Shown here: in pieces, positions 1 through 64,000 of the stretch | How the letters are laid out: every line of letters starts with the position of its first letter | How positions within the stretch are numbered: the first letter of the stretch is position 1 | Assembly (NCBI RefSeq): GCF_947568905.1 | Contig: NC_079172.1 | Coordinates: forward strand, 36,704,001 to 36,768,000 | Source: Ostrea edulis | Taxonomy: Eukaryota | Direction: 5' to 3' | DNA: 64,000 bases | Notes under the pieces: model-generated | The model's input: only the letters and a program-made list of their open reading frames with translations | Database searches by the model: none | What the model was told of the DNA's origin: nothing | Program-made: the position numbers and the translations under genes

Positions 1-95
1 GGTGCTGTGAGGTTGTGATGGTGGTGTTGTGATGGTAGGAAGGAGTTATATGGGTGTGACAGGATGCTGTGCGGGTGTGACGGATGAATGGGAGG
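1..95. repeat. End of a G/T-rich degenerate minisatellite (same family as 57470-58228)
   Basis: GGTGTTGTGATGG / GGGTGTGA motifs, followed by sequence homologous to what follows the 57.5-58.2 kb array. Confidence 0.7.
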
Positions 96-319
96 TGTTT
101 ACTCTCTTACGTACCCCATTCTACCTGATACTTCCAGGGGTCCTTCATTACACTAAAATTGTATTTAATGGCCAGTGAAAGTATGATTTCACTATCGAAA
201 GAGTGTGGTTTTTTAAAAAGGAATTTAGATAAATATCTCAAAAGATATTAGTAAATAATGGTTTTGATTTTCATAAATGTTTAGTTTAAAAAAAACATAA
301 AACTGTGTCCTTAAGGTAA

Positions 320-672
320 GGGGCATCAGCTGTCATTTTGTCACAAAAATTGAATCTAATGAAAATTGCTTTATATTATATAGTTCAGTAATAACACCAT
401 TGTTTAATAATTTCAATTACATTTTTACCTCAAAGAATGAACATGAATATGTGATTTTGATGATTTAATAATTATTGTTTTGCAAGACAATAATTCTTCC
501 TTAGATATTTCTTTACGCTAAAAGTGGTTATTTAAAGTAATTTTATTAGCTTTGTCTTGTGTTTGAACAAAATAAATGTTTTCATTAGTCATTGTTATAT
601 ATTGTTATATATTCTGTCTTTGAAAGATTTTGAGATAAAATGGTTCTCATCATTTTCACAGCTAATGCCCCC
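320..672. mobile_element. Old Kolobok-like non-autonomous DNA transposon
   Basis: Inverted termini GGGGCATCAGCTGT / ACAGCTAATGCCCCC. Right flank TTAA, left flank GTAA. A decayed counterpart is present at about 58458-58803. Confidence 0.5.
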
Positions 673-1089
673 TTAAACTATTCATATCATGCCTCAAATC
701 ACAGCTATACACCCTTTTTATCATTTCGGAAAATCACCAACAATAAAACAAAATAATTGACAGCTTGTATCGCTCTTTTGATTGTGAAAGTATACTTCAT
801 ATAAGGTGCTTTATGGAACAAATTAATCAACATTTGATGCAATGATTCACCTTAGTAGTGTTTATGAGATTGGTTGCCGTGTTTTATCTTCACCTTTTCA
901 TCAACATTAGAAAAGAAACAGCATTCAACCCAACTTCATAATTTATTGATGACTTTTCTGATATGTATCATTCCGTCTAACCTGTTTCCAGACCATACAT
1001 TAAATGTTCTTGAGTTTTATTCATTGCGATCTAATTAAGCAATCCCGTGTTTATGATTTCCGGTTAATGATGATGTCTTTATAATTTAG

Positions 1090-1161
1090 CGATCTTGAAA
1101 GAAATCAACTAACAACGTTGGAGAAGGGAGCGTTTGAAGGATTGGGAAATTTACAGGAACT
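1090..1161 (+). CDS. Internal coding exon, one 24-aa LRR (x-DLERNQLTTLEKGAFEGLGNLQEL), phase 2-2
   Basis: TTTAG acceptor, GTAAGT donor, exactly 72 nt, open frame matching xLxxNxLxxLxxxxFxxLxxLxxL. Confidence 0.93.
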
Positions 1162-1265
1162 GTAAGTATCTCTACATACACTTTGCTCACTATGAACTAT
1201 TTTTTAATTGGAATCTGAACTATTCTATTTAAAAATGAATACTAATGTTATTGAAATATATTTTT

Positions 1266-1510
1266 AGCCGACCCCTTTTTCTATTCCTATAAAGCAGAGT
1301 TTATTCAAAAGTCTCTAAATGAGAAGAATAAAAACCATTCTTGTTGTGGCGTCGACACTTAGATATATTGACAACGTTTATCTATTAACAATAATCATTT
1401 TCATTCATATATCGACTCGATATATCCCGGTGAACGCGAAATAAAGGCACCACAGAGTCCTCAACATTTCCTTCGTACATATACATTTTATTGAAAATAG
1501 ATATTAACCA
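1266..1510 (+). mobile_element. Penelope-like (Naiad-type) reverse transcriptase fragment, decayed
   Basis: Translates to YSYKAEFIQK...LRYIDNV.SINNNHFHSYIDSIYP, homologous to 29900-30150. Confidence 0.8.
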
Positions 1511-1784
1511 TAAACTAACTGACTATTAATACATGCATATTTATCTATCTATTTAATGTAACCAAGAAATGATTATGTCTATTTATCATAGTAGTTAGTA
1601 TATTGAAAGTTGTAATTAAGGTGATAAGAACTTATGTTGAAACCATTGTATATGATATACACTCATACAATGAAATCTGTTTAAATCAATCGTATTTATG
1701 TAGGCATATTTGCCATTATTACCCCCATATGATGTATACATTTCTAAATTTATTCAATACGCATGTGCTTGTTCTACGTATTAT

Positions 1785-2170
1785 CAGGCTACTAAAGTTG
1801 ATGTTACAGGGGTTTCAAATATCTCCTTTTTAATCAGAATTTCGCAATTTTTATGGTCGTTACAATGATTTAGTCTGCCAATGCAACTTATCTTTAAATA
1901 GAGTGCTCTCTGACATGTTTCATAGCGATTGTTAGGCCTTTCTTGGGGCACTGATTTGACTAAAAATTAATCTGTTTACCTGATCAAGGGATATGGCTCA
2001 CGGCATGTGGGCTGTGACCGACTGTGACCGGTCGACAGGGGATGGTTACTCCTTCTAGGCACCTTATCCCACCTCTAATATATCCAGTAGTTCGTGTTTG
2101 CCCAGCTCTCTATTTTGTATTCCTTATATGAGTTATGAGATTGATCACTTTTCCTTATCTTCACCTTTTA
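1785..2170 (+). mobile_element. Penelope-like element 3' end (RT thumb remnant plus 3' UTR)
   Basis: KLMLQGFQ...FRNFYGRYNDL remnant, then the recurrent tail ending GAGTTATGAGATTGATCAC...TTATCTTCACCTTT. Confidence 0.8.
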
Positions 2171-3029
2171 TTGATACCATCATGTATGTAAGAAAACTTG
2201 TGTGGTTTTTGAAATTTATAAAGGTAGGAAATGTCGTTCAAACATGTAAATGTACATATACGATATCGAAGTTTAAAGAACATTATAGTAAACAGATTAT
2301 TGGAGGGAATACTATTAAAATAACATAAATAAAGGCGATTAGAAAGTAAGGTGTGATTTATATAGCCGCCCATTGGGTGAAATCGAAAGAAAACTGCTAG
2401 ATTTTTTAAGCACATAAACAAATATAAAATCATTATCAAGAAAATTTATAATTGGTTTTTAAATTGTAAGTTTAGGGCCTAATTTGGGTGCTTATCACTG
2501 GCGGATCTAAAATGGACTTGTGGGAGGGCATACCCCTAAAAATTTTAAAGGCTTCATAAAATTATGTTTCCTTTGTTAGAATACAATTTAGATTTACTTT
2601 TTTGATGGAATAGATAAATAACATATATAAAAGGAATCTCTTCATTGATTTGTTTTCTTTAAAAACAATATCATGAAATGTTAAGCTCAACGTTTATATG
2701 TCTGTTTATGTGTTGATATTGGATGTGTCGTGTTAAAATGTCGTAGTACTTAAAATAAGTTATGTTAAGATCAGCGGGTGCGCATCAAAAGATCGTGAAA
2801 TGCACAATACTTACTGGCACTAAAGAACTTCATCGACGTTGAGAGAATTTTTTATTTTCATTTTGTGACAGTACTTTTTATCTAAAGAATTTTTATTTAT
2901 TTCTGAGTACATGTATATCAATAAAAATTCAGCTGGTAACCCGCTTGCACCCGACCTTTTGTTTACAAATACGACTTATTGATGTTTTCCAAAAGTAAAA
3001 TGTTATGGGTTATTCAACTGACTGTCATA

Positions 3030-3846
3030 CACCTGCACTAATGTACCCCTCTCTGATTTTGTTCTATTCTGACGTTTTCGGGAAAGGGCTACAAATCCAC
3101 AGGATCTTCGTAATGGTTCAAAATATTTTTCCCATTAACTTGTAATAAACCCCTAGTATTTGTCTCCAATGTTATTTACACCAAAACATCTTACTAACTT
3201 TGTGCTTGGGTATGTCTAATAGAGGTGTTTTTTTATTTGAATATCACGTACAACATGCTAAATTCTTCGTCTGCTCCTCCATGCTTGTTATCGTGAGATC
3301 TTGTAGGTGGATCAACTGAAAAACTTAAACATTGACAATCATCTCTAAAATGTAGATAATTGAGTCATTCCGACAAAGGAGGGAAAATGATATGGTGGCA
3401 GAACAAATATACATTCTGCTGTTCGTTTTTTAACTTGATATCAAATTCAAACTTTATTTAATACTGACGAATCCGCTTTTTCCTCCGTACTCGTCCATTG
3501 ATGTAAACACTACCTTACATTGGCATATAGCGCCCGGAAGTTGAAACTTCAGTAAATCATACATGGCGCATAAATATGAATCTAAATATGAATATATAGA
3601 AATTGCTGCAAACGGTAAAATAGAGCTTCGGAAATCGTAATATGCAGATTGTAAATTCAGATAATGTCAAAGAAACATAGAATATCATTTTATTTACGTA
3701 AAGAAAGTCAGCTAATATGTAGAATGATCGAAAATGTTGCAGTAGTGAATCACTCCCGCATCTGCAATATTACTGATATCCTAAGACGTTTTAACCCCCC
3801 CCCCCTCCCCAATGAAAAATCTAAGGGGAGCACATCATTACAGCTA
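3030..3846 (+). mobile_element. hAT-like MITE, older copy (same family as 60085-60928)
   Basis: Degenerate terminal inverted repeats CTGCACTAATGTACCCCT / CATCATTACAGCTA. Homologous in reverse orientation to 60085-60928 and also present at about 62595-63421. Confidence 0.7.
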
Positions 3847-5526
3847 GAAATTACAATGCGGGGAATTTACGATAGCTGTCACAGTCAAAATATAGGTAGT
3901 ATCGTTTCGGTTTTTAACCGTAAGAGTTCTAGAACTCTTAAGTAATTTCACCACAAAATTATATTGTATTTTACTACGGAAGTTCTAAACCTAGTTGCGT
4001 AAAGCACTTTAGTGTATTTTTAGAAAAGCGCCAATACTCTGCATAGCGTTCAACATAAAAACAAGTTTAACTATCGATCTTAATTATTGTGTTTTATTTT
4101 GATAATTCTAAAGGTGTAAAATCTTTTTTCATATTGTCATCTAATTTCATTTCTTTTGATTGTGTTTTATTGTTACATTCTTCTGCTCATCTTTTTAATA
4201 CACCTTAGCGTAATTTGTTTTATATAAGGCGCTATCTAAATTTTGTTATTATATTTGCAACCGGAGTGTCCAGGACTCAATCCCTGACGGTAACACACAA
4301 TACGTTTGAAATGAAATATATAGTGATTGTTTATTTGTCAATCAACTCACAAGTGATGTGAAAGTATGGCTGCTTATGAGATACCTTGCAAACCGATATC
4401 ATCTATCACGGCCACTGTTGTCGCGATAAAAAACAAAAACTTATTTCAAGAAACTCAACATTTAGACCCTGAAGCGTTCTGTTACCGTTCTGTTCTCGAT
4501 AAAAAATGTCCAATTCCCACCTTAAACTGTTTTGTTCTCGATAAAACCGTTCCATTCCCACACTAAACTGTTTCATTTCAAGCGTTCAGCGTTTTGTTTC
4601 AAGCCCAAACCGTTCGTTCCCACAAACTATGCGTTCCCGCATGGTCACTTGGAACTCGCACGTCAGTTTGTTATTTTATTTCAACATGGCGTTAGGTCGA
4701 CATGGAAAATGCTATCGTTCCTGATTCGACACAATATTTTAAACTTGTACAAGGGTGGACAGTTCTGCAGTTCACATCCGTAAATGTTTACCGACAAATT
4801 ACAAGTATATCACGACACGACAAAGTATATTCTTAATCAATGGGTAAAATCTTTTTACTGAAGAACAAAATGAATGAACATGGATGTTTCATTTTTAAAC
4901 CAATAAATAAATAAATGAATAGCAATAATGTTACTGTTGATGAAAAGAAAAAGCTCGGAAATAAAATGTCAAATTACATGATCTGCTTTAAGTACGGACA
5001 ACTCTTACATTGATCTGAATTTGACATATTTCCGAGTCGTGAAAATGTTTTTCGGGAAATCAAAAACAATCATTTATAAGAATTCCAAAAGCAGTTTGTG
5101 TGGTGTCATCTTCAAAAGAGGGTATGAATTGGTCGAGGCACTAAGAGTTGCTACAGTAATGGTGTACATTGTACTAGTCTACGGGAGAGTGGACACAGAG
5201 TTCACACAATAGGTCCCCATCTCAAGTGACTTTGCCCTCTTTCATATCCTCTTTTAATTTTGGGATATGTCACCCAAACCCTTTTAATGTATGTTTATCG
5301 AAAGGGTACCTTTATATGTACCATTAATTAACGTCACATGTCACCATGACAATGAAACAATGCAGGCATACCCCTATCGGGGGTTTTAATGCACAATGAA
5401 TATTTTTATTGAAAACTGTTATTAAGGGTTCTAAATTGAAATTCGATCCAGAATTGTTATTTATTATTAGATTACATAGACATTCATTGATGTATTCATT
5501 TTTTGATACATTCATTATGAAAATGT

Positions 5527-17930: not shown

Positions 17931-18124
17931 AAAACCTGCTCTTAAAACCCCTTACTAAGCATTTCTATTGGTCAGAACCCTAACACCATTCCATGGATCA
18001 TGCCACTATACAGGTTATATCATTTGAATACAAATAGTGAATACAACATTTTCCCGCTATGTTATCGAAACACAGGAAAATATAAGTATTTTATCTCAAG
18101 TGTAATTTAATCATTCGTACTTTC

Positions 18125-27238: not shown

Positions 27239-27310
27239 ATACCTATACAGCAATAAACTAACAACGTTACAGAAAGGATTGTTTGAGGGATTGACGAAAT
27301 TAACGAAACT
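27239..27310 (+). CDS. Internal coding exon, one 24-aa LRR (x-YLYSNKLTTLQKGLFEGLTKLTKL), phase 2-2
   Basis: CTTTCTTTGTAATTCAG acceptor, GTAAGT donor, exactly 72 nt, open LRR-consensus frame. Joins exon 1 and exon 3 in frame (CT|A = Leu). Confidence 0.93.
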
Positions 27311-27321
27311 GTAAGTACATG

Positions 27322-36052: not shown

Positions 36053-37053
36053 CATTATACAATTCTTCTAAAGCTCTTGAAAATTGATAATGCTATAAAA
36101 GCCTAGTCTGATCCCTTACACTCCATTGTAATAGGTTAGTGTAAAAACAGACTGGCGGGAATAGGGACTATAAGAAAGCTATGAGATTAGTTCAATATTC
36201 AAACCTATTTGAATAGTAAGTATCTAACCGAAATGGGATGATTTCATCCAAAATATTTTACTAAAATTATTTGTGGGGATATGAGTTCACATAGACATTT
36301 TGTTTCAAAATGAGTATGAGTATGGAAATGAACTTGGGTTCAAATTGACTGGTTACCTAATATGGCTACATCAACAACAAAAAATCACTTGAAGCTGTGA
36401 GTTTTTTTGGGTCATATGTGGGTTCAGAGAATATTGGAAAGTATGTTAGGAAACAAGTATAGTGGAAAAATATGTTAGGATTTTTAACATTAAATTTATG
36501 AGTCGGCGATGCAGGAATGCAGTGATATAGGGACTCAACCATGCAACTGTCATTTGAGGGGTGGGACGTAAATCAAAGATAGTTATAAGGGGTTGATCTT
36601 AAGCTTTCTGGTCTGTCCCAATATCTTCTCAAAGAGCTACAATTCTGCAGCTAGTTCTTTAGAAGATTCTTTAAAGATTTCCCATGTATATATTTCGCAT
36701 GTAAAACTTTGATCCCCTATTGTGACCCCACACATTCCCTATGGACCACGACTTTAACAAAGTTAAACCTGCACTATATCTGAATGTAAAACATTGATCC
36801 TCTATTGTGACCTCACTCTACCCCCGTACACCATGATTTACACAACCAGGAACCTTTTAAGTGAATTTAGACTTTTCTGGCATAGTGGTTCTTGAGAAGA
36901 TTTTTTTTGAATGACCCTACCCTAATTTTGCATTCTCATGATTATTTCCCCCTTGGAATTGTGCATGACCCTTTTTATGAACAAACTTGAATCACCTTCA
37001 CCCATGGAAGATGTATACCAAGTTTGATTGAAATTGGCCCAGTGGTTCTTGAA

Positions 37054-37089
<36 letters not shown>

Positions 37090-42700: not shown

Positions 42701-43010
42701 CCAAATCAATTTTTTTTTCTTTTTTGGCCTCATTTGACCTACTGAAGAATGGATTAAGATCAAAGTTCAAGAAACAAATCCAGAAAAGGTGGAAAGACCT
42801 CTAATTGTTCGCGAACAATTAGGATTACTAGTTGTTAATACTTTTCTGCACATCTGATAATCTGCTGTCCCAAAGTTCTGAAAAACTGCTCAGAGAATTA
42901 TCATTATTCGCATGCTGTAAAGTTTGGTTGATTTTGTCTTTGAACGGCCTCGGCGTCCATTTCGTTTAACCCGCGGAGAACGGCGACTAGATGTGATTAC
43001 ATTAACAAAA
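39756..43010 (-). mobile_element. Second copy of the DIRS-like relic, interrupted by a HINE at 40794-42831
   Basis: Same gag and RT motifs as 16765-17930; homology resumes at 42832. Confidence 0.85.
40794..42831 (+). mobile_element. About 2.04-kb Helentron-type non-autonomous element (HINE)
   Basis: 5' subTIR and inverted repeat GATCTTTCCAC...GTGGAAAGACC with a T-rich microsatellite. 3' GGTGGAAAGACC, a perfect 22-bp palindrome CTAATTGTTCGCGAACAATTAG (42801-42822) and an ACTAG end. Inserted at TT with no TSD; empty site at about 17755. Confidence 0.85.
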
Positions 43011-46000
43011 CCTGCTCTTAAAACCCCTTACTAAGCATTTCTATTGGTCAGAACCTTAACACCATTCCATGGATCATACCACTATACAAGTTATATCATT
43101 TGAATACAAATAGTGAATACAACATTTTCCCGCTATATTATCGAAACACGGGAAAATATAAGTATTTTATCTCGAGTGTAATTTAATCATTCGTACTTTC
43201 TACATTCTATCGCGTACTTATACGTGATTTGTACATTCTCTCGCGTACTTTTACGTGATGTGTACGTTCTCTTGCGTACTTATACGTGATTCGTACGTTC
43301 TTTTGCGCAAACATACACAGCAGATCTTTATATGTCTAAGTACATAGCACTTTTTATGTAATTTGTACATTTTCTCACGTAAAAAGGTACCTTCTAATTT
43401 TATATATGTCTATTGCCTAAGTACATGCATATATTAACTTAATCTATACGTGATTTATACATTCTGTCTCGCATAAAAATACATATTAATTGTATCTATA
43501 CGTGAAAGGTACATACTATTGGAAATTAAACGAGAGTTACCTGTAAAGTGTTGTTTGTAATTATACAAAAACTATTGGAAAGGAATGGAAGAATCACATG
43601 AGATAACGTCAGTGTATCTAGCCTCAGTGTTTAAGTCTAATTAATAGCCGAAATGTACTTGAACGAAGGGTAGGAAAAAGGTTAGACATGCAGTTCATCC
43701 ATTCCATTCTAGTAATTAATTTGAATTACAATCAAATATCAGCTTACTAAGCCTTACAGGTACATGTCTCGTATAATTTCCAATTCTACTTCATCACTGT
43801 ACATGCTATTACGTAACCACATGAAATTGTCAAGCTTTAAATGCGTCACAGAATTTAATATTTCTCGAGCCTTGGCGGGGGAAATATTCAAATCCAATAA
43901 CGAATTTCATAAATTCCATATGTCATAGGCACGAGTGTAAGATTTAATTTATCACACAAGTATTCTTCAACGCAATATATTCCATTTGTTTATTTCACAA
44001 CCCGACTGTCACAGAATTGTTTTGCTTTCAATTTGATTGTGACGTCGTCGCGACGTCACGGTTTCAAGAAACTTGAAATTATTTTCACTTCATAAAAGAC
44101 AAAAAATCCCATTGGAACAACCGTGGTGACAAAACAAAGTCTTTTACCGGCAATGTTAACAATTTCAAAGGATGACATGTTGTTTTCTTCAGGTGGCGCA
44201 TGAATGATCAACTTACCTAATTTGCATAGTTATGAACCTGTGTTACGGGTTTATATCATTTTTTCGAACCCGTGTCATGAACCTGGGAAAAGTACCGTTG
44301 TGTGATAATACAAATTAATTGATGATAATATGTTTTGTTCTTAAGTAAATATATACATCATTACATATGAACAGGGTATTTTTAGTTATCAGAACACTTT
44401 TATAAAGTCTGTCCCAAGCATGCCAAAGATAGCTAGTTAATGCACTGACATGCCGATGTATTCCTCAAATGCGTAACATTTACAAAACTATCCGTGCTCA
44501 TGAACCGGTAAAACAATTAAATTTAAAAAAACCTACTTCTTTAAGAAAAGAGTCAATTCTAGATTCTAAATACGAATCAGTCAATTCCAGATTGTTACCG
44601 GTCACGTTTGTTTCAAAGTGCTAAAATCATATCGGGCACTGTCTTCAACTTCGATAAACCCAGGCAAATTTCGTCAAAATCAAATGATTTCATCCAGTCC
44701 AGTACAACTGCGACATCCGGAATTTCTGAATATCTAGGAAAAGATGTTTCCTATCAAGCACCTTTAAGAAATCCTTTTTAATAGTGCATGCTGTTTCATA
44801 CGATGATGAACAGCATCAACATTAGTCACTCCTTGCTGTATTGACACCAGGAATGACTTTCCGGTCCACCACAGAATGTCTTCCATTTACATAGATAACA
44901 CACATATTATTTTTTCTATTCACGAAGACAACAATATGTCTTTAGTTTCGTCCAATGAGTAACTACTTTGGATTGATCTCCAGATCTCAAAAGAAATCAG
45001 TGGGTTAAAAGTTTACCAATTTGGGAATTTTTCGTCAACTCTAGAATGTGGTGGCCAGTCTGGCATTATTAAGGTATCGTATAGCCGGTTTTTGACAGAT
45101 ATATAATTCCTGCGTTCAAAAAAAAGAGCTACATGTATATGGTACTTGTTGCTTGATCTAACGTCATTTTCTGAAAAACTGATATTATCATACAGAACGG
45201 GAGAAAACAATACAATCTCAATCCAAAGCAAGAAATAGAAAAAGACATATATTGTGAAGGGTTTACAGTCGCAGTGTTTATATTTTTTTCTAATTGATGA
45301 TATTGCGTGTACATTAGCATAGCAAATAAATCAATATTTGGACTAACATTAAACATTTCAATGGCTCATTGAAAAACCTGTTTATCAAGCATTAATTTAT
45401 GTATTTTCTTGTTTGAATGTCTTCTTTCCAAAACTGCGTTGTAGTTTTATTTTACCTGGGATATGAGCAGCTATAAGCCAAATATATGCTAAATGTATGC
45501 CCATATTCATATTTTCTAACCGTTCTATCGCTCTCTAACGAACGAGTAAATCCTTTTTCTCATATATATATGTGTTACGCCAGTTGTATGGTCAGCTTCA
45601 ACTTTAACGTGCTTGTCTTGTCTGTCATTCCATGTTGCCTGCAGTGAGGAAAAAACGCTTAGAGGTCTAAAACATTAAGATGATGATTGAGTTGAATCTT
45701 CCTATGGTATACATATAGATGTATTAATTGATTGAAGGTTACACGTTTAGTCAATCAAACCTGCAATGCTTATGAAATCTGGTAACCTCGGTTCATGGGT
45801 ACTTTAGAACCAACAATGTTCAGCTTCCACTGCTGCAAGTCTTTCCTACTTAGATTTTATCAATGAATTTCATATTGAACCTTTGATTCCTGTAAAGCCG
45901 AAATTTTCTTATTCTGTAATTGCCTATAAACTGCTCAGGTTGAGCTAGAAAACATAATACAAAATTCCCAATGACAGTGCTAATAATTTCTTTTGTATGA

Positions 46001-46488
46001 AAACGTTAAAATATCGAACTGTAGTCAATCTCATAACTCCTGTAAAAGTATAAAATTAAGAGTAGGAGACACACGTACCCTTGGGTATAACAGAGATGGG
46101 ATCAGGGGCCCAGGAGAAATGTTGTATAGAAAGGAGTTATGAAAATGATCACTGTTTGTTATATTCACCTTTTCATACAATCAACAGACAACAATGCCAG
46201 TCTCTTATTATATGTTCAGATATGTTATGATATCCTAGGCACCTGATCCCACTTCTGGTATATCCAAGGGTCCGTGTTTGCTCAACTTTCTATTTTGTAT
46301 TGCTTATAGGAGTTATGAGATTGATCACTGTTCGTTATCTTCACCTTGCATTACGTCTACCATCGATGTTTTTTGTATGTATTGCAAGATATATATCCAA
46401 CAAACTTACTCTACTGCAATGGAAATCGTATAAGTCCCCGTAAAAAGATCTAATGTTAACTGTTTTAACTATTTACTATATTTAGTTT

Positions 46489-46751
46489 GGGGATCCGGGT
46501 TAGAATAGATCCTCAGTACCCCTTTGCCTGTCGTAAGAGGTGACTAAATGGGGCGGTCTTTCAGATGAGACCGCTAAAACCGAGGTCCCGTGTCACAGCA
46601 GGCGTGGCACGATACAGACCCCTCCCTGCTCAATGGCCATAAGCGCTAAGCATAGGCCTAAATTTTGCAGCCCTTCACCTGCAGTGGTGACGTCTCCATA
46701 TGAGTGAAATATTCTCGAGGAGGACGTTAAACAATAATCAATCGATCAATC
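46489..46751 (+). mobile_element. Near full-length SINE-like non-autonomous retroposon with (CAAT)n tail
   Basis: GGGGATCCGGGTTAGAATAG...GTCGTAAGAGGTGACTAA...GACGTTAAACAATAATCAATC. Absent from the paralogous site at about 22160; two other copies occur in the window. Confidence 0.75.
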
Positions 46752-46774
46752 TTATATGAGTGAGTTTTCTCAAA

Positions 46775-47258
46775 TTCCCTAGACTAGCTATGTAGTACCT
46801 CCTGCTGACTAGAAATAATAAAATCTACAGGCTAGCTTTGTAGTTCTTCATGATAACTAGAAATTATGAAATCCTGAGACTAGTTTTGTATTACCTGTTG
46901 ACAAGAAATCATAAAATCCCTCAACTAGCTTTGCAGTATCTATTGATGTCTAGAAATTATAAAAATCCTCAGTCTAGCTTTGTAGTATCTCATAATGACG
47001 AGGCATTATAATTTCCATAGTCTAGCTTTACAGTACAGTTTGGTCACTAGACATTATAAAATCCATAGTCTAGCTTTACAGTACATTTTGGTCATTAGAA
47101 ATCATAAAATCCTTAGTATAGCTTTTAGTATATCTTAATGACGAGACATTATAAAATCCCTCGACTAGCTTTTCAGTATCTGTTGATGTCTAGAAATTAT
47201 AAAATCCTTAGTCTAGCTTTGTAGTACAGCCTGATAACTCGACATTATAAAATTCAAA
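46775..47258. repeat. About 48-bp minisatellite, about 10 units
   Basis: Consensus CTAGAAATTATAAAATCCTTAGTCTAGCTTTGTAGTA...TGA, recurring at about 48-bp spacing. Confidence 0.9.
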
Positions 47259-50200
47259 ATTGATGTATACTATATTCTTTGAACGTATTATGGATATTAT
47301 TTTGAGTCTTTAGACCACGATCTCTCTGCATGGAAGGTTTCACATGAAATGAGTATTTCAAGTATTTCAATCCCAGGAAAGACTGGATCTTTTCTGCAGT
47401 TTTTTTTTATTCTAGCAGATGTTGCAAAGAATTTCTTATTCTTATGATTTGGATTGAAATTCATCGTGAGGAAGACATTTTATGTCATATATAGATATCG
47501 AGTGATACGATAAAAATATAACATTTGATTGATATATCAACTGACACTGTATCAGAAGGCCATATATTCCGAACATCTCCGTCCTAGAAAATTAATTAGG
47601 CCAAGGATATCTGAATCACATCTTTGTGATATCGTTATGATCCTCGTTAGTTTCGTTCTCTGTATTCGATTATTTATTATTTTACACGAATATGCATGTG
47701 AACATCTTCACTTTGTTACTAAATTATAGAGTAATTTGTCACGGTAAGCTGGAGAGTTCTAAAAATTACGTTCGTAGCTCAAAAATATTGGTGCAGTGTC
47801 TTCTCTATCCATAACAACTCATACATTTTTGGTTACGCGTTATATTATTAAGTTAATAAAAAAATCCGCATTTACGATATTTGTCTTAAGGTAACTCCAT
47901 ACCCGTATTGTTATCTCAAAAAAGTCTAGAACGTGTTTTATTAGAGTTTCTTTAAACTACTCAATTCCAGTATTGTGCAGTAGCGACATCAGCAAAAGAT
48001 AATTTCATTTCACAAGAACCGATTTCGTGGTTTCTTAAAACAAAGTCTTACGATAAGACCCCCCCCCCTTATTAAATGTTGAACGTCTTTCGAATTTCTC
48101 AAAGACACATGATGATAATAATGAAATTCAGAAAGCTGACGACAGGGAAGCCAAATTCATCCCATTTGTCATAAACATCATTTGATAACTTATATGTATA
48201 TTACAATCCTCCCGGTCTTTCTGTGATTGCCTCTACTTATGCATTATATGAAAGGCGAATATTATGAATAGTGATCAATCTCAGAAATTGTTCAAATATT
48301 ATGACCATATGTGTCAACAGGTGGAATGCAGAACAAAAATATAGCAATATTGTACAGATCCTATTTAAAGGATGAACAATTACAATGGTAATGTTTAAAC
48401 ACTGTCTCAAAGTAACTAGATTCGCTTACAGAATTTTAAAACCTTTTTTGATATCAAATGAATTTCTAAAACCAAACCTAGAAATCTACTCATTGTTCCA
48501 TTTGAATGAGAAACATTGTTGAAGTAATTTTGAGCATGCCATTGTTTGGTATGTGGGCGATTCTTTCATTTCATTCACAAACTGGCAAAATATTTTCCCA
48601 TGTGATTTTTTTTCAAATGATTACGATGTGTCTTGAAAGTTTGAATTGATTCTGTGTCTACACTTTAAAAGCTTACTAGAAAAAAATATAAATCCGTTTG
48701 GTCTAACAACACAACTCAAAATTAATCAATGTTAATTGCCCAATTACCTCATTACAATGACGTGACGGTAATCTCATATATTAAGTTAGTGTTGGAATTT
48801 TGAATATATTTCTTAGAAAGGTTTGGAAAATAACGTAATTTAAACTTTTTACTTATTTTCTAAAGAAAACTAATTGAATGCATGGAATACATTGTGGGGA
48901 AAACCACTCATGGAATTATTTTTGAAAGAAAATATTTTGTCTATCAAAACATGTTCCATGCCGTAACGCTTCTATTTTCTGCACTTATGATACACCCATG
49001 AACTTCATTGACATATTTCCCGACACTGCAACATTTTATGATGTCATATTAAAACACATGTAATACTTTCTGAATGATGGTTACCAGTGAATGCAAGAAG
49101 GCAGCAAATAAGTACATTTTCTTCAGTTGTGGTTAATTAACGTTATCTGTACCGTTCATTGATTTTTGTTTAAATTTGATTAAATAGTCCCTAGCAAACA
49201 ACGATATAGACACATTCATTCAATTAATTTCCAAAGTAACAAGAATTGCTAAATTAGGGCATGATTTGAAAAATATATATGGGAAAATGTAAGAAAATAT
49301 CCATACCGCAACACTCCATACCGTCACATCAGTAACAATAGCGGTACGGATCTATGTTGTGACGGTATGGAAATTCTTTCAATTAAGTTAATAAAATTGA
49401 TATTATAATTGGAAATTATTTTCAAAATGGCAAATATATAGGTTTTTTAAAAAAACAAAAAATGACATGAATTTGCTGAAACAGAAAAAGAAATACATGA
49501 ATTAGACATATGGTTTCAAAAGCTTAAATCTGGTGCAGTGGCCCATGTCAGAATGTTGTGTAAGTCTAAGAATGTATGATCTCACAGGGTAAGGGTTCTT
49601 ACTACTTGTTATATATTTATATATATAAAGATAAGTCAACGTTACCGTAGAAAACAGCCAATCTGCATAGCAATGGTAAAACCGGCAGCTAATGAAAAAA
49701 TGTATAACATACAAGCTACATGTATCTGTCCTGTTTTGTCCAGCCAAATGTGCTTGTTTCATTCCCTCTGAACACATTTTTCATGAAATTATTCAAGAAC
49801 GCAATGAATCAGAGCAGTCTACAGAAATTGGCATAAGTTGTAATGGAAATGTGACAGCAGAATGGAAAGGTGAAGATAACGAACATTGATCAATCTAAAA
49901 CTCCTGTAAGGAATACAAGATAAAGAGTTGGGCAAACATGGACTCTGGACAGGATATACCAGAGGTGATTTCAGATGCCGAGGAGGAGTAAGCATCAGAT
50001 TCTCAAGATAGCAAGATAATGAAGGTTACAGTTGGAGATGCAGAACTTATAGGGAAGTGCATCTTCGCAAGTCAATTGTTTCTGATACGCTCCGCTCCAT
50101 ATATGTTTATGTGGAGTGGATCATATCAGAAACCCTTGACTTGGGGAAAATGAGGGAAGTGGTGCGTTGTTGAGTCTGATAGAAAACTTTACCCAGGTAC

Positions 50201-56784: not shown

Positions 56785-57125
56785 TAATGATCAACAGTCT
56801 CGTTTAAAATCAGCATTTCGCAAATTATATGGTCGTGAAAACAATCAATACAACCTATCATTGGGTCAAATGTTGTTTGACTTGTTTCGTACCTATCGTT
56901 AGACTGTTCTTGGCACACTAACTTTGACTACGGAATACTTCGTTTACCTGATTAAGATATAGGATTCACAGCAGGTGTGACCGGTGGACAGGAGATGCTT
57001 ACTCCTCCTTGACACCTGATCCCACATATAATATATCGAGAGGTCCATGTTTGCCCAACTCTCTATTTTGTATCGCTTGTGGGAGTTATGAGACTGATTA
57101 CTGTTCGTTATCTTTGCCTTTCACC
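56785..57125 (+). mobile_element. Penelope-like 3' end
   Basis: Same recurrent tail as 30350-30720. Confidence 0.8.
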
Positions 57126-57469: not shown

Positions 57470-58228
57470 AGGTGTTGTACATGTGTGATGGGGTGCTGTA
57501 TGGGTGTGATGGGATGTTGTGAGGGTGTGATGGGGTGTTATTTGGGTGTGATGAGGTAATGTATATGTGTGATGGGGTGCTGTATGGGTGTGATGGGGGT
57601 GTTGTGTGGGTGTGATGGGGTGTTCTGTGGGTGTGAAAAGGGTGTTGTGTGGTTGTGATGGTGTATTGTATGAGTGGGATGAGGTTATCGTATTGGTATG
57701 TTGGGGTGTTGTGAGGGTGTGATGGGAGTGTTGTGGGTGTGATGGGGTGTTGTACAGGTTTGATGAGGTGTTATTCGGGGGTGATAGAGTGTTGTGTGGG
57801 TGTGGTGGGGTGTTGTATGGGTGTGATAGGGTGTTGTGTTGGTGTGTTTAAATATTGGGTGTGTGATCGGGTCTTGTATGGGTGGATGGGTTGTTGTGTG
57901 GGTATGATAGGGTGTTGTGTGGGTGTGATGGGTGTTGTATGAGTGTAATGGGGTGTTGTATGGTGTGATGGGGTGTTGTATAGGTGTGATTGGGTGTGGT
58001 ATGGATGTGATGGGTGTTATGTGGGTGTGATGGGTGTGTTGTTCGGATGTGATGGGGTGTTTTATGGGTGTGATTGGGTGTTTTGTTCGTGTGATGGGGA
58101 GTTGTTTGGGTATGATGGGGTATTTTGTGCGGGTGTGACAGTTTTTTGAAGGTGTGGTGGGATGTTATGAGAGTGTAATGGGGTGTTGCTAGGTTGTGAC
58201 GAGTGTGTTGTGCAGGGGTGTTGTGATG
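57470..58228. repeat. 21-bp G/T-rich minisatellite, about 36 degenerate units
   Basis: Unit GATGGGGTGTTGTATGGGTGT and variants; almost no C on the + strand. Confidence 0.92.
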
Positions 58229-59249
58229 AATGAATTCGGGATGTTTACCTTCTTAGCACCCTCTTCTATCTGGTACTTCCAGGGGTAAAATTGTACTCAA
58301 CGGCTAGTGAAAGTATTATTCACTATCGGAAGAGTGTTTTAGAAGAATTTAGACGTATATCCCAAAAAGTATCAACAAGTGATGTTTTTGATTTTCATAA
58401 TTTTTTTGTTTGAAAAAATAAAACATTTAGCTGCGTCTTTGAGACATACCTTATTTCAAGGGCATTTGCTGTCATTTTGTCACCACATTGAATCTAATGG
58501 AAATTGCTTTTCATAAATACATACAACACCATTATTTAATAATTTCAAACACTTTTTAACTTCAAAGGATGGACATGAATATGTGATTTTGATGATTTGA
58601 TAATTATTGTCTTGCAAGACAATAATTCTTCCATATATTTTTTTTTACACTAAAATCGGTTATGTAACGTAGTTTTGTTAGGTTTCTCTTTTTTTGTAAA
58701 AAAAAAAAATGAATGTTTTTATTAGTCAGTGTTATATATATTTTATGTCATTGAAAGATTTTGAGACAAAAATAGCTATCATCACTTCCACAGTCAATGC
58801 CTCATTCAACTATTTATATTATTCATTAAATCAAAGCGAATTTTGGCCCTTAAATTATTATTGGTAAACAATACACCTTTTTTATCATTCCGGAAAATCA
58901 CCAACAATAAAACAGAATAATTGACAGTTTGTATCGGTCTTTTGATTGTGAAAGTATACTTCATATAAGGTGCTTTATGGAACAGATTAATTGGAATTTT
59001 GATGGAATGATTCACCTTAGTAGTGTTTATGAGATTGGTTGTCGTGTTTTATCTTCACCTTTTCATCAACACTAGAGAGGAACAGCATTCAACCCAACTT
59101 CATAATTTATTGATGGCTTTTCTGATATGTATCATTCCGTCTTCTTTCCAGATCATATATTAAATGTTCTTGATTTTTATTCATTGCGATCTAATTAAGC
59201 AATTCCGTGTCAATGATTGCCGGGTAATCAATATATCTTTTTAATATAG

Positions 59250-59321
59250 ATCTGTGTCCCGCAATCAACTAACAACGTTGGAGAAGGGAGCGTTTGAAGG
59301 ATTGGGAAATCTAGAGTCTCT
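59250..59321 (+). CDS. Internal coding exon, one 24-aa LRR (x-SVSRNQLTTLEKGAFEGLGNLESL), phase 2-2
   Basis: CTTTTTAATATAG acceptor, GTAAGT donor, exactly 72 nt, open frame; paralog of 1090-1161. Confidence 0.92.
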
Positions 59322-60084
59322 GTAAGTATCTCTATATACACTTTGCTCACTATGAACTATTCTTAAATTGGAATCTGAACTATTCTATTTAAAAATGAAT
59401 ACTCATGTTATCGAAAAGCATCGACTTTTAGTTGACCCGTTTTTCTATTCCTATAAAGCAGAGTTTATTCAAAAGTTTCCACATGAGAAGAAAAAAAAAC
59501 TTCTTGCTGTGGTGTCGACACTTAGATATATTTACGACGTTTATTTATTAACAATAATCAGTTTTATTCATATCTCGATTCGATATATCCCTGTGAACTC
59601 GAAATAAAGGCACCACAGAGTCCTCAACATTTGCTTCGTACATAGATATTTGATTGAAAATAGATGTTATCTGCAAACTAACAAGTCCAATTTATGACAA
59701 ACGGGATGTTTTCAGTTCCTCATTTGTCAACTTCCCATATCTATGTATTATATAATGCCAGGATTCAATTATTATGATGTCTTTTACATTTACTCCATTA
59801 TCTATTATTGATTGTCATTTACTTCTATGGGGAACAGAAGCTCAACATGTTGAAATAAACCAACATACTTAATCAAAGTTAGAGATTCTGGAAAACGTAG
59901 ATATCACTGCGTCACACCATGCTCTATTCAAATAACTGACTATTAATACATGAATATTCATCTATCTTTTTAATGTAACTAAGAAATGATTATGTCTATT
60001 TATCATAGTAGTTAGTATATTGACATTTGGAATTAAGGTGATAGTCCCGTGCGTTGGAAGAACTTATGTTGAAACCGTTGTATA

Positions 60085-60108
60085 TAGCTGCAATAATGTA
60101 GCCCTCTC

Positions 60109-60146
<38 letters not shown>

Positions 60147-60928
60147 GGAGAGGGCTACAACTCCTTAGGATCTCCGTAATGGTGCAAATGCGGGAGTGAT
60201 TCACTCCCGCAACATTTGCGCTCATTCTAAACATTTCCTGACTTTCTTTACGTAAATAAAATGATATTTTATGTTTCTTAGTCATTATATAAATTTACAA
60301 CCTGCAACTTTAGATTTGTGAGGCTCTATTCTACCGTTTTCAACAATTTCGATAAATTCCAATTTCTCGATTCATATTTGTGCGCCATGTTTGATGTACT
60401 GAAGTTTCAACTTCCGGTTGTCAAGTCATTTGCATATGCCATATAAGGTAGTATTTACATCAATGGAAAAGTATGGAGGCGAAAGCTATTTCGTCGGTAT
60501 TGAAAAGGTTTGAATTTAATATCAAGTTAAAAACCGAACAGCAGAGTGTAAATTCTTTCTGCAACAATATGATTTTCCTTTCTTTGTCGAAGTGGCTCGA
60601 GTAACTACATTTTCGCGCTGATTGTCAATGATTAGGCTTTTCATTAGATCCACCTACGAGATCTCGCGATAACAAGCATGGCGGAGCAGACGAAGAATTT
60701 TGCATCCTGTACATTATATTTAATGAAAAACACCTTTATTAGACATGCCCGAGCACAAAGTTGGTACTCCTTTTGGTGTAAACAACATTTGGGAGTAATA
60801 CACAGAGTTTATCATCGGTTATTCATAAAATTATTTTGCACCATTACGGAGATCCTATGGAATTGTAGCCCTATCCCGAAAACGTCAGAATTAAAAAAAA
60901 AATGGATAGGGCTACATTATTGCAGCTA
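60085..60928 (-). mobile_element. 844-bp hAT-like MITE, young insertion
   Basis: TIR TAGCTGCAATAATGTAGCCCT at both ends. 8-bp TSD GTTGTATA (60077-60084, 60929-60936). The empty site ATTGTATA is at about 1646. Confidence 0.9.
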
Positions 60929-61410
60929 GTTGTATATGATATACACTCATACAATGAAATCTGTTTAAATCAATCGTATTTATGTAGCAATATTTACCAT
61001 TATTACCCCCATGTGATGTATAAATTTCTAAATTTATTCAATACACATATGCTTGTTCTACGTATAATCAGGCTACTAAAGTTGATGTTACAGGGGTTTC
61101 AAATATCTCCTTTTAAAGCAGTATTTCGCAATTTTATGGTCGTTACAATGATCTAGTCTGTCAATACAACTAGTCTTTGAATAGAATGCTCTCTGACGTG
61201 TTTCATATCGATTGTTAGACCTTTCTTGGGGCACTGATTTGACTAAAATTAATCTGTTTACCTGATCAAGGTATAGGGCTCACGGCATGTGAGCTGTGAC
61301 CGGCTGTGACCGGTGGACAGGGGACGGTTACTCCTTCAAGGCACCTTATCCCAACTCTAATATATCCAGTAGTTCGTGATTGCTCAGCTCTTTATTTTGT
61401 ATTCCTTATA

Positions 61411-61697
61411 TTCCTAAGTACTTCGTTACTAGAAAATACGGATGTATATTTAATTGCTGTTATAAAATTTAGAAATTCATTTCAAAATTAAGTATTATCT
61501 CCCTCATGCATAGCTCTTATCATTAGACGAATTTGCCTCCACTGTTTTTGGCACGCTGTTTTTGGCTATAATAGCTCTAAAACTTCATTGTTATTTCGGA
61601 TTTCAAATATTTCTGTTGATCATCACTGAAGAGCCATTATTTGTCGAAATGCGCATCTGGTGCATCAAAATTGGTACCGTATAAGTTTTACATTATA
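61411..61697 (+). mobile_element. Partial copy of the 352-bp retrozyme-like repeat inserted into a Penelope-like tail
   Basis: Homologous to 20609-21150 but starting at a different register. TTATA at both ends; absent at about 2125. Confidence 0.8.
61621..61662 (+). ncRNA. Type I hammerhead ribozyme with intact catalytic core
   Basis: CATCA-CTGAAGA-GCC-ATTATTT-GTC-GAAA-TGCGCA-TC-TGGTG: one mismatch in stem II, palindromic stem III, ATC cleavage triplet. Confidence 0.8.
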
Positions 61698-64000
61698 TGA
61701 GTTATGAGATTGATCACTTTTCCTTATCTTCACCTTTTATTGATACCATCATGTATGTAAGAAAACTTGTGTGGTTTTTGAAATTTATAAACGTAGGAAA
61801 TATCGTTCAAACATGTAAATGAACATATACGATATAGAAGTTTAAAGAACATTATAGTAAACAGATTATTTGAAGGAATGCTATTAAAATAACATAAATG
61901 TAGGTGATTAGAAAATAATGTGTGATTTATATAGTGGCCCATTGAGTGAAATCGAAAGAAAGCTGCTAGATTTTTTAAGCACATAAACAAATATAAAATC
62001 TTTATCAAGATAATTTGTATGTGATTTTTAAATTGTACGTTTAGGGCCTATTTTGGGTGCTTATCACTGGCGGATCTAAAATGGATTTGGGGGAGAGCAT
62101 ACCCCTAAAATTTTAAAGGCTTCATAAAATTATGTTTCCTTTGTTAGAATACAATTTAGATTTACTTTTTTGATGGAATAGATAAATAACATATATAAAA
62201 GGAATCTCTTCACTGATTTGTTTTCTTTAAAAACAATATCATGAAATGTTAAGCTCAACGTTTATATGTCTGTTTATGTGTTGATATTGGATGTGTCGTG
62301 TTAAAATGTCGTAGTACTTAAAATAAGTTATGTTAAGATCAGCGGGTGCTCATCAAAAGATCGTCAAATGCACAATACTTACTGGTACTAGAGAACTTCA
62401 TCGACGTTGAGAGAATTTTTTATTTTCATTTTGTGACAGTACTTTTTGTCTAAAGAATTTTTATTTATTTCTGAGTACATGTATATCAATAAAAATTCAG
62501 CTGGTAACCTGCCTGCACCCGACCTTTTGTTTACAAATACGACTTATTGATGTTTTCCAAAAGTAAAATGTTATGGGTTATTCAAGTGATTGTCATATAC
62601 CTGCACTAATGTACCCCTATCTGATTTTGTTCTATTCTGACGTTTTCGGGAAAGGGCTACAAATCCACAGGATCTTCGTAATGGTTCAAAATATTTTTAC
62701 CAATAACCTGTAATAAACCCCTTGTATTTGTCTCCAATGTTATTTACACCAAAACATATTACTAACTTTGTGCTTTGGTATGTCTAATAGAGGTGTTTTT
62801 TTTAAATTGAATATCACGTACAACATGCCAAATTCTTCGTCTGCTCTTGCATGCTTGTTATCGTGAGATCTTGTAGTTGGATCAAGTGAAAGACTTAAAC
62901 ATTGACAATCATCTTTAAAATGTAGATAATTGAGTCATTACGACAAAGGAAGGGAAATGATATGGTGGCAGAACAAATATACATTCTGCTGTTCGTTTTT
63001 TTTAACTTGATATCAAATTCAAACTTTTTTTTTAATACTGACGAATCCGCTTTTCCCTCCGTACTCGTCCATTGATATAAACACTACCTTACATTGCCAT
63101 ATAGCACCCGGAAGTTGAAACTTCAGTAAATCATACATGGCGCATAAATATGAATCGCTAAATATGAATATATAGAAATTGCTGGAAACGGTAAAATAGA
63201 GCTTCGGAAATCGTAATATGCAGATTGTTAATTCAGATAATGTCAAAGTAACATACAATATAATTTTATTTACGTAAAGAAAGTCAGCTAATATGTAGAA
63301 TGATCGAAAATGTTGCAGTAGTGAATCACTACCGCATCTGCAATATTACTGATATCCTAAGGTGTTTTAACCCCCTCCCCTCCCCAATGAAAAATCTAAG
63401 GGGAGCACATCATTACAGTTACAAATTACAATGCGGGGAATTTACGATAGCTGTCACAGTCAAAATATAGATAGTATCGTTTCGGTTTTTAACCGTAAGA
63501 GTTCTAGAACTCTTAAGTAATTTCACCACAAAATTATAGTGTATTTTACTACGGAAGTTCTAAACCTAGTTGCGTAAAGCACTTTAGTGTATTTTTAGAA
63601 AAGCGACAATACTCTGCATAGCGTTCAACATAAAAACAAGTTTAACTATCGATCTTAATTATTGTGTTTTATTTTGATAATTCTAAAGGTGTAAAATCTT
63701 TTTTCATATTGTCATCTAATTTCATTTCTTTTGATTGTGTTTTATTGTTACATTCTTCTGCTCATCTTTTTAATACACCTTAGCGTAATTTGTTTTATAT
63801 AAGGCGCTATCTAAATTTTGTTATTTGCAACCGGAGTGTCCAGGACTCAATCCCTGACGGTAACACACAATACGTTTGAAATGAAATATATAGTGATTGT
63901 TTATTTGTCAATCAACTCACAAGTGATGTGAAAGTATGGCTGCTTATGAGATACCTTGCAAACCGATATCATCTATCACGGCCACTGTTGTCGCGATAAA

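What the first reader, a model, noticed from the sequence alone, without database searches (positions are those of the whole stretch)
59250..59321. Paralogous LRR exons are identical in the scaffold but hypervariable on the concave face
Seen: compared with exon 1090-1161 there are 10 differences in the first 13 nt, 0 in the central 48 nt and 5 in the last 11 nt. The next 40 intronic nt differ at only 1 position. Protein changes DLER to SVSR and LQEL to LESL include two codons changed at all three positions (GAA/TCC, GAA/TCT). Established: the xxLxLxx positions form the ligand-contacting concave surface of LRR solenoids. Inference: strong diversifying selection or targeted sequence replacement at binding residues, as in a variable receptor system. 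This is the best candidate for an undescribed system in the window.
Basis: partly seen in the sequence, partly recalled or inferred. Interest (0 to 1): 0.9.

Follow-up and report, generated by a model that had tools for sequence, protein, structure and literature searches.

The report
Duplicated LRR exons with swapped ends
Two recently duplicated 72-base exons of a leucine-rich-repeat gene share an identical structural core but differ completely in the 24 bases coding the ligand-facing strand, which fits exchange of short DNA tracts between repeat exons plus selection better than a new variable immune receptor.

Summary
Exon A (1090-1161) and exon C (59250-59321) differ at 10/13, 0/48 and 5/11 nt, and the next 40 intron nt differ once. 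The 5' patch is the densest mismatch cluster in about 13.5 kb of duplicated DNA in the window.

The two exons are probably not exons of paralogous genes. With exon B (27239-27310) they form three same-strand, phase-2, single-LRR 72-nt exons (Pfam LRR_8, E 3e-30). A and C lie in a colinear tandem duplication of at least 4.4 kb.

Point-mutation diversifying selection is not supported:
- In the exon ends, synonymous sites are saturated (pS 0.79 against pN 0.57), including Arg AGA/CGC and Leu TTA/CTA.
- 14 of the 15 differences are transversions, against 165 transitions : 132 transversions in the flanks (p 2e-4).
- The patch runs about 40 nt into the upstream intron (26% divergent).
- Divergence along the duplicate ranges from 0.2% to 18%.

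The ends therefore have a different, older ancestry than their surroundings. I read this as short-tract sequence exchange among LRR-exon units, filtered by selection on the binding face. Nothing points to a somatic variable-receptor system.

Known analogues are divergence peaks in duplicates under gene conversion and the 72-nt LRR exon arrays of brown-algal ROCO genes and LGR receptors. First-stage notes report similar 72-nt LRR exon arrays elsewhere in this genome; these are unverified. Only one exon pair is available, and no transcript, allele or donor could be retrieved.

The parts
1090..1161 (+). LRR exon A. 72 nt, intron phase 2 on both sides, AG acceptor and GTAAGT donor. Encodes (L)DLERNQLTTLEKGAFEGLGNLQE(L).
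27239..27310 (+). LRR exon B, with the same length, phase and splice signals. It is an older paralogue: the centre matches A and C at 37/48 and the flanking introns at about 49-56%.
59250..59321 (+). LRR exon C, the finding. 72 nt, phase 2. Encodes (L)SVSRNQLTTLEKGAFEGLGNLES(L).
59250..59262 (+). 5' divergence patch. It covers the codons for x5-L6-x7-x8 of the beta strand and differs from exon A at 10/13 nt, all transversions.
59311..59321 (+). 3' divergence patch. It covers the codons for L1-x2-x3-(L4) of the next repeat's beta strand and differs from exon A at 5/11 nt (1 transition, 4 transversions).
59263..59310 (+). Scaffold core (NQLTTLEKGAFEGLGN). 48/48 nt identical to exon A.
59211..59249 (+). 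Intronic extension of the 5' patch. 26% divergent from copy A (2 transitions, 8 transversions), against 6% further upstream.
58192..64000 (+). Copy C of the colinear segmental duplication, paired with copy A at 52-4430. It carries three copy-specific insertions (about 59683-59929, 60086-60929 and 61412-61692). Divergence along the pair ranges from 18% to 0.2%. It runs off the end of the window.
52..4430 (+). Copy A of the segmental duplication.
57471..58212 (+). GT-rich 21-nt minisatellite immediately upstream of copy C. The same kind of repeat occupies window 1 to about 95 upstream of copy A, so the duplication extends further 5'.

Best explanation
Exons A, B and C are successive single-repeat exons of one large-intron gene or gene remnant. 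Each is 72 nt, symmetric in phase 2, and encodes one typical 24-residue LRR. A and C belong to a young tandem segmental duplication at least 4.4 kb long, offset by about 58-59.6 kb, which probably copied a two-exon block. Inside this otherwise 90-100% identical pair, the 24 nt coding the beta-strand segment LxxLxLxx have a much older, effectively unrelated ancestry. These 24 nt are the last 11 and first 13 nt of the exon, and about 40 nt of upstream intron share the older ancestry. The mosaic was made in the germline by exchange of short tracts among LRR-exon units (ectopic gene conversion). There are two possible routes: the ends of one copy were overwritten from a third LRR exon after the duplication, or repeated conversion homogenised the introns and scaffold while tracts covering the ends were rejected. 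Selection for repeat-specific ligand-contact residues decides which mosaics survive. Shown here: the duplication, the mosaic divergence profile, the saturation of synonymous sites, the odd substitution spectrum and the LRR fold positions. Inferred: gene conversion as the mechanism, selection as the filter, and that the exons are expressed.
For: Three same-strand 72-nt phase-2 LRR exons are present and no others. They match LRR_8 with E 3.4e-30. The strands fall on x3-L4-x5 in a model with pLDDT 97.4. The A/C duplication is colinear with shared repeats and copy-specific insertions, and both copies are preceded by the same minisatellite. The divergence profile along A/C is 18, 6, 26, 77, 0, 45, 10, 6.6, 4, 4 and 0.2%, with a 394-nt perfect run reached in 0 of 2000 permutations. 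That heterogeneity points to segments of different age, meaning sequence exchange. In the ends pS is 0.79 and pN 0.57, and in the centre both are 0. Transitions to transversions are 1:14 in the ends and 2:8 in the adjoining intron patch, against 165:132 in the rest of the duplicate (Fisher p 2e-4). No comparable cluster occurs in 9.2 kb of control duplicates. The exon B centre is 77% identical to A and C, while its flanks are about 49-56% identical, which indicates purifying selection on the scaffold. The theory and the opsin example of a 'peak of divergence' at selected sites in duplicates under gene conversion are reviewed in PMC3924837.
Against: Only one exon pair is available. No donor exon for either patch exists in the window, so conversion is inferred and not demonstrated. 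The boundaries are much sharper than the divergence peaks described for the opsin genes: 0/48 lies next to 10/13 and 5/11, and the downstream intron is clean from its first base. This would need very short or discontinuous tracts, or many rounds of selection. The two sub-scenarios cannot be told apart. Expression of the exons is untested, and no matching protein or transcript fragment was found.
Confidence: 0.6

Rival explanations
1. After a recent duplication, classical diversifying (positive) selection fixed many point substitutions in the codons for the concave-face residues.
For: All amino-acid differences fall on the x positions of LxxLxLxx (x2, x3, x5, x7) or on L6, and the scaffold is unchanged. 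The coincidence of the densest mismatch cluster with these codons shows that selection is involved in some way.
Against: pN (0.57) does not exceed pS (0.79). Five purely synonymous differences sit in codons of conserved residues, while nearby intron divergence is 6-10%. 14 of the 15 differences are transversions, unlike the flanks. The patch continues into the intron. Three D/E to S changes each need 2-3 hits.
Confidence: 0.08
2. The pattern is an assembly or polishing artefact. Reads from other LRR paralogues, anchored on the conserved scaffold, corrupted the consensus at the ends of one exon copy, or the A and C blocks are mis-joined haplotypes.
For: The exon is the only part of the duplicate likely to be shared with many paralogues, so mis-mapped reads would pile up exactly there and fade into the adjacent intron, as the patch does. 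The far 3' part of the duplicate is 99.8% identical, as in a collapsed or very recent duplicate. I guess from the GC content and the count of 10 genome pieces that the genome is bivalve-like, and such genomes are known to be hard to assemble because of heterozygosity (my own knowledge).
Against: Both versions keep the reading frame, the Leu and Arg positions and the splice signals. Mis-mapped reads should affect A and C alike. The duplicates differ by three sizeable insertions and by graded divergence from 0.2% to 18%, which does not look like a haplotig pair.
Confidence: 0.08
3. The exons belong to a dedicated variable-receptor system. LRR modules are templates or targets of programmed, possibly somatic, replacement of the beta-strand codons, comparable to the copy-choice assembly of lamprey VLR genes.
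For: The replaced segments are bounded by blocks conserved among the units (acceptor region, scaffold, donor) that could serve as short homology anchors. The boundaries are sharper than ordinary conversion peaks. First-stage notes report other arrays of 72-nt LRR exons in this genome, 'intact and decayed' (untested).
Against: The exons are complete and spliceable and lie 26-32 kb apart. There are no partial cassettes or donors in 64 kb. Only germline sequence was seen. A 2026 review of immune diversification lists no LRR-based system in molluscs (PMC13428168), so there is no precedent, and ordinary evolutionary processes are enough to explain the data.
Confidence: 0.04
4. The exons are unexpressed relics (pseudo-exons) carried along by segmental duplications, and the pattern has no present function.
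For: The introns are huge (26-32 kb) and full of repeats and duplications. No matching protein or transcript fragment was found in the databases that could be searched.
Against: All three exons keep an open frame, the LRR consensus and strong splice signals. The scaffold shows 0/48 differences where 6-10% is expected (P about 0.004-0.02). The exon B centre is conserved above its flanks. Neutral decay cannot produce 15/24 next to 0/48.
Confidence: 0.15

Closest known systems
Peak of divergence at selected sites in tandem duplicates undergoing gene conversion (human red/green opsin exon 5; Teshima and Innan 2008, reviewed in PMC3924837)
   Same: Tandem duplicates lie tens of kb apart. Introns and most of the exon are kept nearly identical, while a short stretch coding the functionally distinguishing residues stays highly divergent. 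Divergence along the pair is heterogeneous.
   Different: Here the island is only 13 + 11 nt, plus about 40 intron nt, with 45-77% divergence and saturated synonymous sites. That is far sharper and deeper than in the opsins. No orthologue comparison is available to prove concerted evolution.
Brown-algal (Ectocarpus, Saccharina) ROCO genes: arrays of 72-nt phase-2 exons, each coding one LRR, that evolve by exon duplication and shuffling with variable solvent-exposed residues (PMC3341825, PMC11378527)
   Same: The exon length (72 nt), the phase (2), the one-LRR-per-exon layout and duplication of exon-plus-intron units are the same. Variability is concentrated in LxxLxLxx. A link to adaptive-like immunity was proposed there too and remains unproven.
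   Different: This is an animal-like genome with 26-32 kb introns. No ROC-COR or other partner domain is visible in the window, and no intronic inverted or decayed LRR copies are present here. The repeat register within the exon also differs: here the beta strand is split across the exon junction.
Animal LRR ectodomain genes with one 72-nt phase-2 exon per repeat (gonadotropin receptor and LGR4/5/6 type). By sequence profile the nearest solved structures are LRRC15, IGFALS, LGR5, LRRTM and VLR-A.
   Same: The exon size and phase are the same (stated for gonadotropin receptors in PMC11378527). The repeats are the typical 24-residue type. The profile matches LRRC15, IGFALS and LGR5 ectodomains with E 1e-103 to 1e-115.
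   Different: Those matches reflect the generic LRR class and were obtained with a profile that includes unrelated metagenomic proteins. No 7TM, LRRNT or LRRCT exon is in the window, so family membership cannot be assigned.
Lamprey and hagfish VLR genes
   Same: They have LRR modules with a conserved scaffold and variable concave-face residues, and short homology blocks flank the variable parts.
   Different: VLR cassettes are non-spliced, often partial modules clustered around an incomplete gene and are copied somatically. Here there are complete spliceable exons, three in 64 kb, and no evidence of somatic change.

Membership tests
Leucine-rich repeat, typical 24-residue type (Pfam LRR_8) | LxxLxLxxNxLxxLxxxxFxxL consensus scoring above the Pfam threshold | tested here: met
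   The spliced A-B-C peptide scores 104 bits against LRR_8 (cut-off 27), E 3.4e-30.
Leucine-rich repeat, typical 24-residue type (Pfam LRR_8) | Solenoid with a short beta strand on LxxLxL forming the concave face | tested here: met
   The AlphaFold2 model built on a 32-sequence alignment has pLDDT 97.4 and pTM 0.84, with strands at residues 23-25 and 47-49 (x3-L4-x5). The single-sequence model was an all-helix artefact.
Single-LRR 72-nt phase-2 exon arrays (LGR/gonadotropin receptor type; brown-algal ROCO type) | Each repeat on its own 72-nt exon, with all introns in phase 2 | tested here: met
   All three exons are 72 nt, begin with 1 nt and end with 2 nt of a split Leu codon, and have AG and GTAAGT signals.
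Single-LRR 72-nt phase-2 exon arrays (LGR/gonadotropin receptor type; brown-algal ROCO type) | Partner domain (7TM for LGR; ROC-COR for ROCO) | not testable with these tools
   The only LRR exons in the window are these three. The rest of the gene lies outside it, and the gene's protein could not be retrieved.
Duplicates under gene conversion with a selected divergence peak | Significantly heterogeneous divergence with long identical tracts between the paralogues | tested here: met
   Divergence runs from 0.2% to 18% along the pair, and a 394-nt perfect run was reached in 0 of 2000 permutations.
Duplicates under gene conversion with a selected divergence peak | Paralogues within the species more alike than orthologues between species in the flanks, and the reverse at the peak | not testable with these tools
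   No other genome of this or a sister species is reachable. The metagenome scan and the look-ups by exact protein were blank.
Diversifying selection on xxLxLxx (plant R-gene type) | dN above dS at solvent-exposed codons with unsaturated dS | tested here: not met
   In the ends pN is 0.57 and pS 0.79 (Nei-Gojobori, 8 codons), so synonymous sites are saturated. Power is low with one pair.
VLR-type somatic LRR assembly | Clustered, non-spliced, often partial LRR cassettes around an incomplete germline gene | tested here: not met
   There are three complete exons with canonical splice sites 26-32 kb apart, and no partial copies or patch donors in 64 kb.
VLR-type somatic LRR assembly | Somatic sequence change in immune cells | not testable with these tools
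   This needs DNA from different tissues of one animal.

The most novel reading that the evidence does not exclude
In this bivalve-like genome, families of single-LRR exons undergo a directed micro-conversion process. It swaps only the beta-strand-coding 24 nt between units, using the conserved acceptor, scaffold and donor blocks as anchors. This would be a germline, or even somatic, LRR diversity generator analogous to VLR copy choice but acting on spliceable exons.
Probability: 0.06. Interest if true: 0.85.

Novelty: new member of a known kind. Interest (0 to 1): 0.4.

Why it matters
The case shows in miniature how an LRR binding surface can be re-tiled. A repeat exon is copied together with its introns, and only the two dozen bases coding the ligand-facing strand end up different. 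If a genome-wide census shows that the pattern is common among the many 72-nt LRR exons of this genome, it would document module-level exchange as a route to receptor diversity in a protostome. It would also give a concrete locus at which to test, and most likely exclude, somatic diversification. As it stands the finding is one exon pair explained by known evolutionary processes.

Tried and rejected
- Finding the gene's own protein or transcripts. A word-indexed search with the spliced 72-aa peptide gave only two unrelated short LRR proteins. The exhaustive HMMER search returned giant metagenomic LRR proteins, whose best match to the scaffold was 13/17 residues. A search with the 79-aa ORF next to exon C found nothing.
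- Finding other copies of the DNA. An exact scan of metagenome contigs with 34 nt of the scaffold was blank. Exact-product look-ups of three window ORFs were blank.
- Looking for a donor or a local template for the patches within the window. No 30-mer within 9 mismatches was found apart from A, B and C themselves, and no shared 7-mers of note lie within 400 nt on either strand. Local template switching, inversion and compensated frameshift readings were therefore dropped.
- Single-sequence structure prediction gave a meaningless single helix. It was replaced by the alignment-based model.
- Using exon B as an outgroup to polarise the A/C differences was uninformative, because all three ends are about equally distant from each other.
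- Rfam found nothing at gathering score in the window. It found no hammerhead in 27250-27500 at E <= 1.

Full report
**What is there.** The window is AT-rich eukaryotic DNA (33.7% GC, no N) full of dispersed and segmental repeats. A six-frame motif scan and a small HMM built from the exon peptides find exactly three LRR-coding stretches, all on the + strand: 1090-1161 (A), 27239-27310 (B) and 59250-59321 (C). Each is 72 nt, is preceded by AG and is followed by GTAAGT. Each starts with the third base and ends with the first two bases of a split Leu codon, so the introns are in phase 2 on both sides. Spliced in order, they give a 72-residue peptide that matches Pfam LRR_8 at 104 bits, E 3.4e-30. 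No other LRR exon lies between them. They therefore look like successive repeats of one gene with 26-32 kb introns, not exons of separate paralogous genes.

**Check of the observation.**
- A and C differ at 10 of the first 13 nt, 0 of the central 48 nt and 5 of the last 11 nt.
- The first 40 intron nt differ once.
- The peptide changes (DLER/SVSR, LQEL/LESL) and the two triple-hit codons are correct.

The pattern is far beyond chance.
- The mean mismatch in the 4375 aligned columns of the surrounding duplicate is 7.6%. P(>=15 of 24) is then about 1e-11, or 2e-9 at a rate of 11%.
- The 10/13 cluster is the densest 13-nt window in that alignment.
- It has no equal in a further 9.2 kb of duplicated non-coding DNA in the window, where the maximum is 5-7.
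- The 3' patch taken alone (5/11) is matched by several non-coding windows.

**Context.** A and C sit in a colinear duplication, 52-4430 against 58192-64000, with three insertions specific to copy C. It runs off the end of the window. Both copies are preceded by the same GT-rich 21-nt minisatellite (window 1 to about 95, and 57471-58212), so the duplication also extends further 5'. A second duplication of 12-17 kb, 10205-22847 against 31222-47942 (3-6% mismatch over most of its length and 13-14% at its 3' end), lies in the A-B and B-C introns. The locus is thus a stack of tandem duplications of exon-plus-intron units.

Divergence between the A and C copies is very uneven:

| A coordinates | Region | Divergence |
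|---|---|---|
| 52-736 | upstream | 18% |
| 737-1050 | upstream intron | 6% |
| 1051-1089 | last 39 intron nt | 26% |
| 1090-1102 | exon 5' end | 77% |
| 1103-1150 | exon centre | 0% |
| 1151-1161 | exon 3' end | 45% |
| 1162-1519 | downstream intron | 10% |
| 1520-2129 | downstream | 6.6% |
| 2124-3000 | downstream | 4% |
| 3000-4000 | downstream | 4% |
| 4000-4430 | downstream | 0.2% |

The last segment contains a 394-nt perfect run that no shuffle reached in 2000 permutations. Segments of one duplicate pair with such different ages indicate sequence exchange after the duplication.

**Why this is not ordinary positive selection.** Three results argue against it.
- Nei-Gojobori counts for the eight end codons give pS 0.79 (5 of 6.3 synonymous sites) and pN 0.57. 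For the 16 central codons both are 0. Conserved residues carry purely synonymous differences: Arg AGA/CGC, Leu TTA/CTA, the junction Leu CTC/CTA and the third position of CTT/GTG. Nearby intron divergence is only 6-10%. Selection on amino acids cannot saturate synonymous sites.
- The substitution spectrum in the exon ends is 1 transition to 14 transversions. In the adjoining 39-nt intron patch it is 2:8. In the rest of the duplicate it is 165:132 (Fisher p 2e-4). The ends thus compare like unrelated sequence, not like young point mutations.
- The A-C ends are as far apart as the A-B and B-C ends, although B is a much older paralogue. The centre of B matches A and C at 37/48, and its flanks match at about 49-56%.

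The ends, together with a piece of the upstream intron, therefore have a different and much older ancestry than everything around them.

**Where the variable residues sit.** A single-sequence AlphaFold run gave a spurious helix. With a 32-row alignment of matched stretches from the HMMER hits, the model is confident (pLDDT 97.4, pTM 0.84). Its strands fall at residues 23-25 (E-L-Y) and 47-49 (K-L-S), which are x3-L4-x5 of LxxLxLxxN. The beta strand is split across the exon junction. The two patches at the ends of one exon therefore belong to two neighbouring strands.

**Most likely mechanism.** I read the pattern as germline mosaicism produced by exchange of short tracts among LRR-exon units. 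Selection on repeat-specific contact residues then decides which mosaics persist. There are two variants.
- Overwriting. After a young duplication, which the shared repeats in both copies suggest, the ends of one copy were overwritten from a third LRR exon.
- Protected ends. Repeated conversion homogenised the introns and scaffold, and tracts that would erase the distinct ends were eliminated. This is the 'peak of divergence' signature described for duplicates under gene conversion, with red/green opsin exon 5 as the classical case (PMC3924837).

I cannot separate the two variants. No donor for either patch exists in the window, and there is no local template. The island is also much sharper than the opsin peak. 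I treat that sharpness as the one truly unexplained feature.

**Rivals.**
- Pure point-mutation selection is disfavoured by the synonymous saturation and the substitution spectrum.
- An assembly or polishing artefact is possible in principle, because paralogue reads anchored on the scaffold could corrupt one copy. However, both versions keep the frame, the consensus residues and the splice signals, and the copies differ by large insertions.
- A VLR-like programmed system has no positive evidence. The exons are complete and spliceable, there are only three in 64 kb, and there are no partial cassettes. A 2026 review of animal immune diversification lists no LRR-based system in molluscs (PMC13428168).
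- The exons may be unexpressed relics. The intact frames, the 0/48 core and the conservation of the B core above its flanks argue for constraint, but no transcript evidence could be obtained.

**Comparison with known systems.** Three known systems share parts of the pattern.
- Brown-algal ROCO genes have the same architecture: one LRR per 72-nt phase-2 exon, growth by duplication of exon-plus-intron units, and variability in LxxLxLxx. A similar speculation about adaptive-like immunity was made for them and remains unproven (PMC3341825; PMC11378527).
- Phase-2 single-repeat LRR exons are also reported for animal gonadotropin receptors (PMC11378527) and, from my own knowledge, occur in LGR genes.
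- By sequence profile, the nearest solved ectodomains are LRRC15, IGFALS, LGR5, LRRTM and VLR-A. This only places the repeats in the generic extracellular 'typical' LRR class.

First-stage notes list similar 72-nt LRR exon arrays on other pieces of the same genome. I could not test these.

**Limits.** The analysis rests on one exon pair. The organism was not identified; the GC content and the 10 genome pieces suggest an oyster-like bivalve, but that is a guess. Every attempt to retrieve the gene's protein, transcripts, alleles or further paralogues failed.

**Verdict.** Sequence replacement or mosaic ancestry at the binding-face codons holds up. Substitution-driven diversifying selection does not, and nothing supports a variable receptor system. 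I class the finding as a new member of a known kind, of moderate interest.

Noticed in passing
window 10205-22847 and 31222-47942: A second large colinear duplication, with 3-6% mismatch over most of its length and 13-14% at its 3' end, lies in the A-B intron and again in the B-C intron. It contains a conserved ORF of about 100-130 aa (17337-17729 and 40459-40767, minus strand) with no Pfam match.
   Followed up: partly
window 57471-58212 and 1 to about 95: A GT-rich minisatellite with a 21-nt unit (consensus GGTGTTGTATGGGTGTGATGG, about 31 copies) lies directly upstream of both copies of the exon-bearing duplication.
   Followed up: partly
window 60146-60928 (inverted relative to 3033-3803 and 62598-63379): A repeat of about 780 nt is present once in each duplicate copy. 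A further inverted copy (about 80% identical) is inserted only in copy C, so this is probably a transposable element that was active after the duplication.
   Followed up: no
window 6866-7171 (minus strand): A 102-aa ORF carries the HTH domain of Mos1/mariner transposase (PF17906, E 4e-9). It is a mariner remnant in the A-B intron.
   Followed up: yes
window 1690-2171, 5518-5752, 8097-8506, 10692-10864, 28743-28878, 30224-30719, 31708-31880, 46233-46351, 49865-49996, 56791-57123: A dispersed short repeat family of 120-480 nt (70-87% identical, in both orientations) resembles a SINE or MITE. Together with an adjacent segment (1282-1520, 29940-30176, 59446-59747), one copy lies downstream of each of the three LRR exons. 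This supports an old homology between the exon-plus-intron units.
   Followed up: partly
window 27250-27500: Another first-stage note reports a hammerhead ribozyme 46 nt downstream of the exon B donor. Rfam gives no hammerhead match here at E <= 1, and nothing in the whole window reaches gathering score.
   Followed up: partly
window 46772-47253: The self-alignment shows an internally repetitive stretch with a period of roughly 45-50 nt or multiples of it, at about 72-77% identity. It was not characterised further.
   Followed up: no
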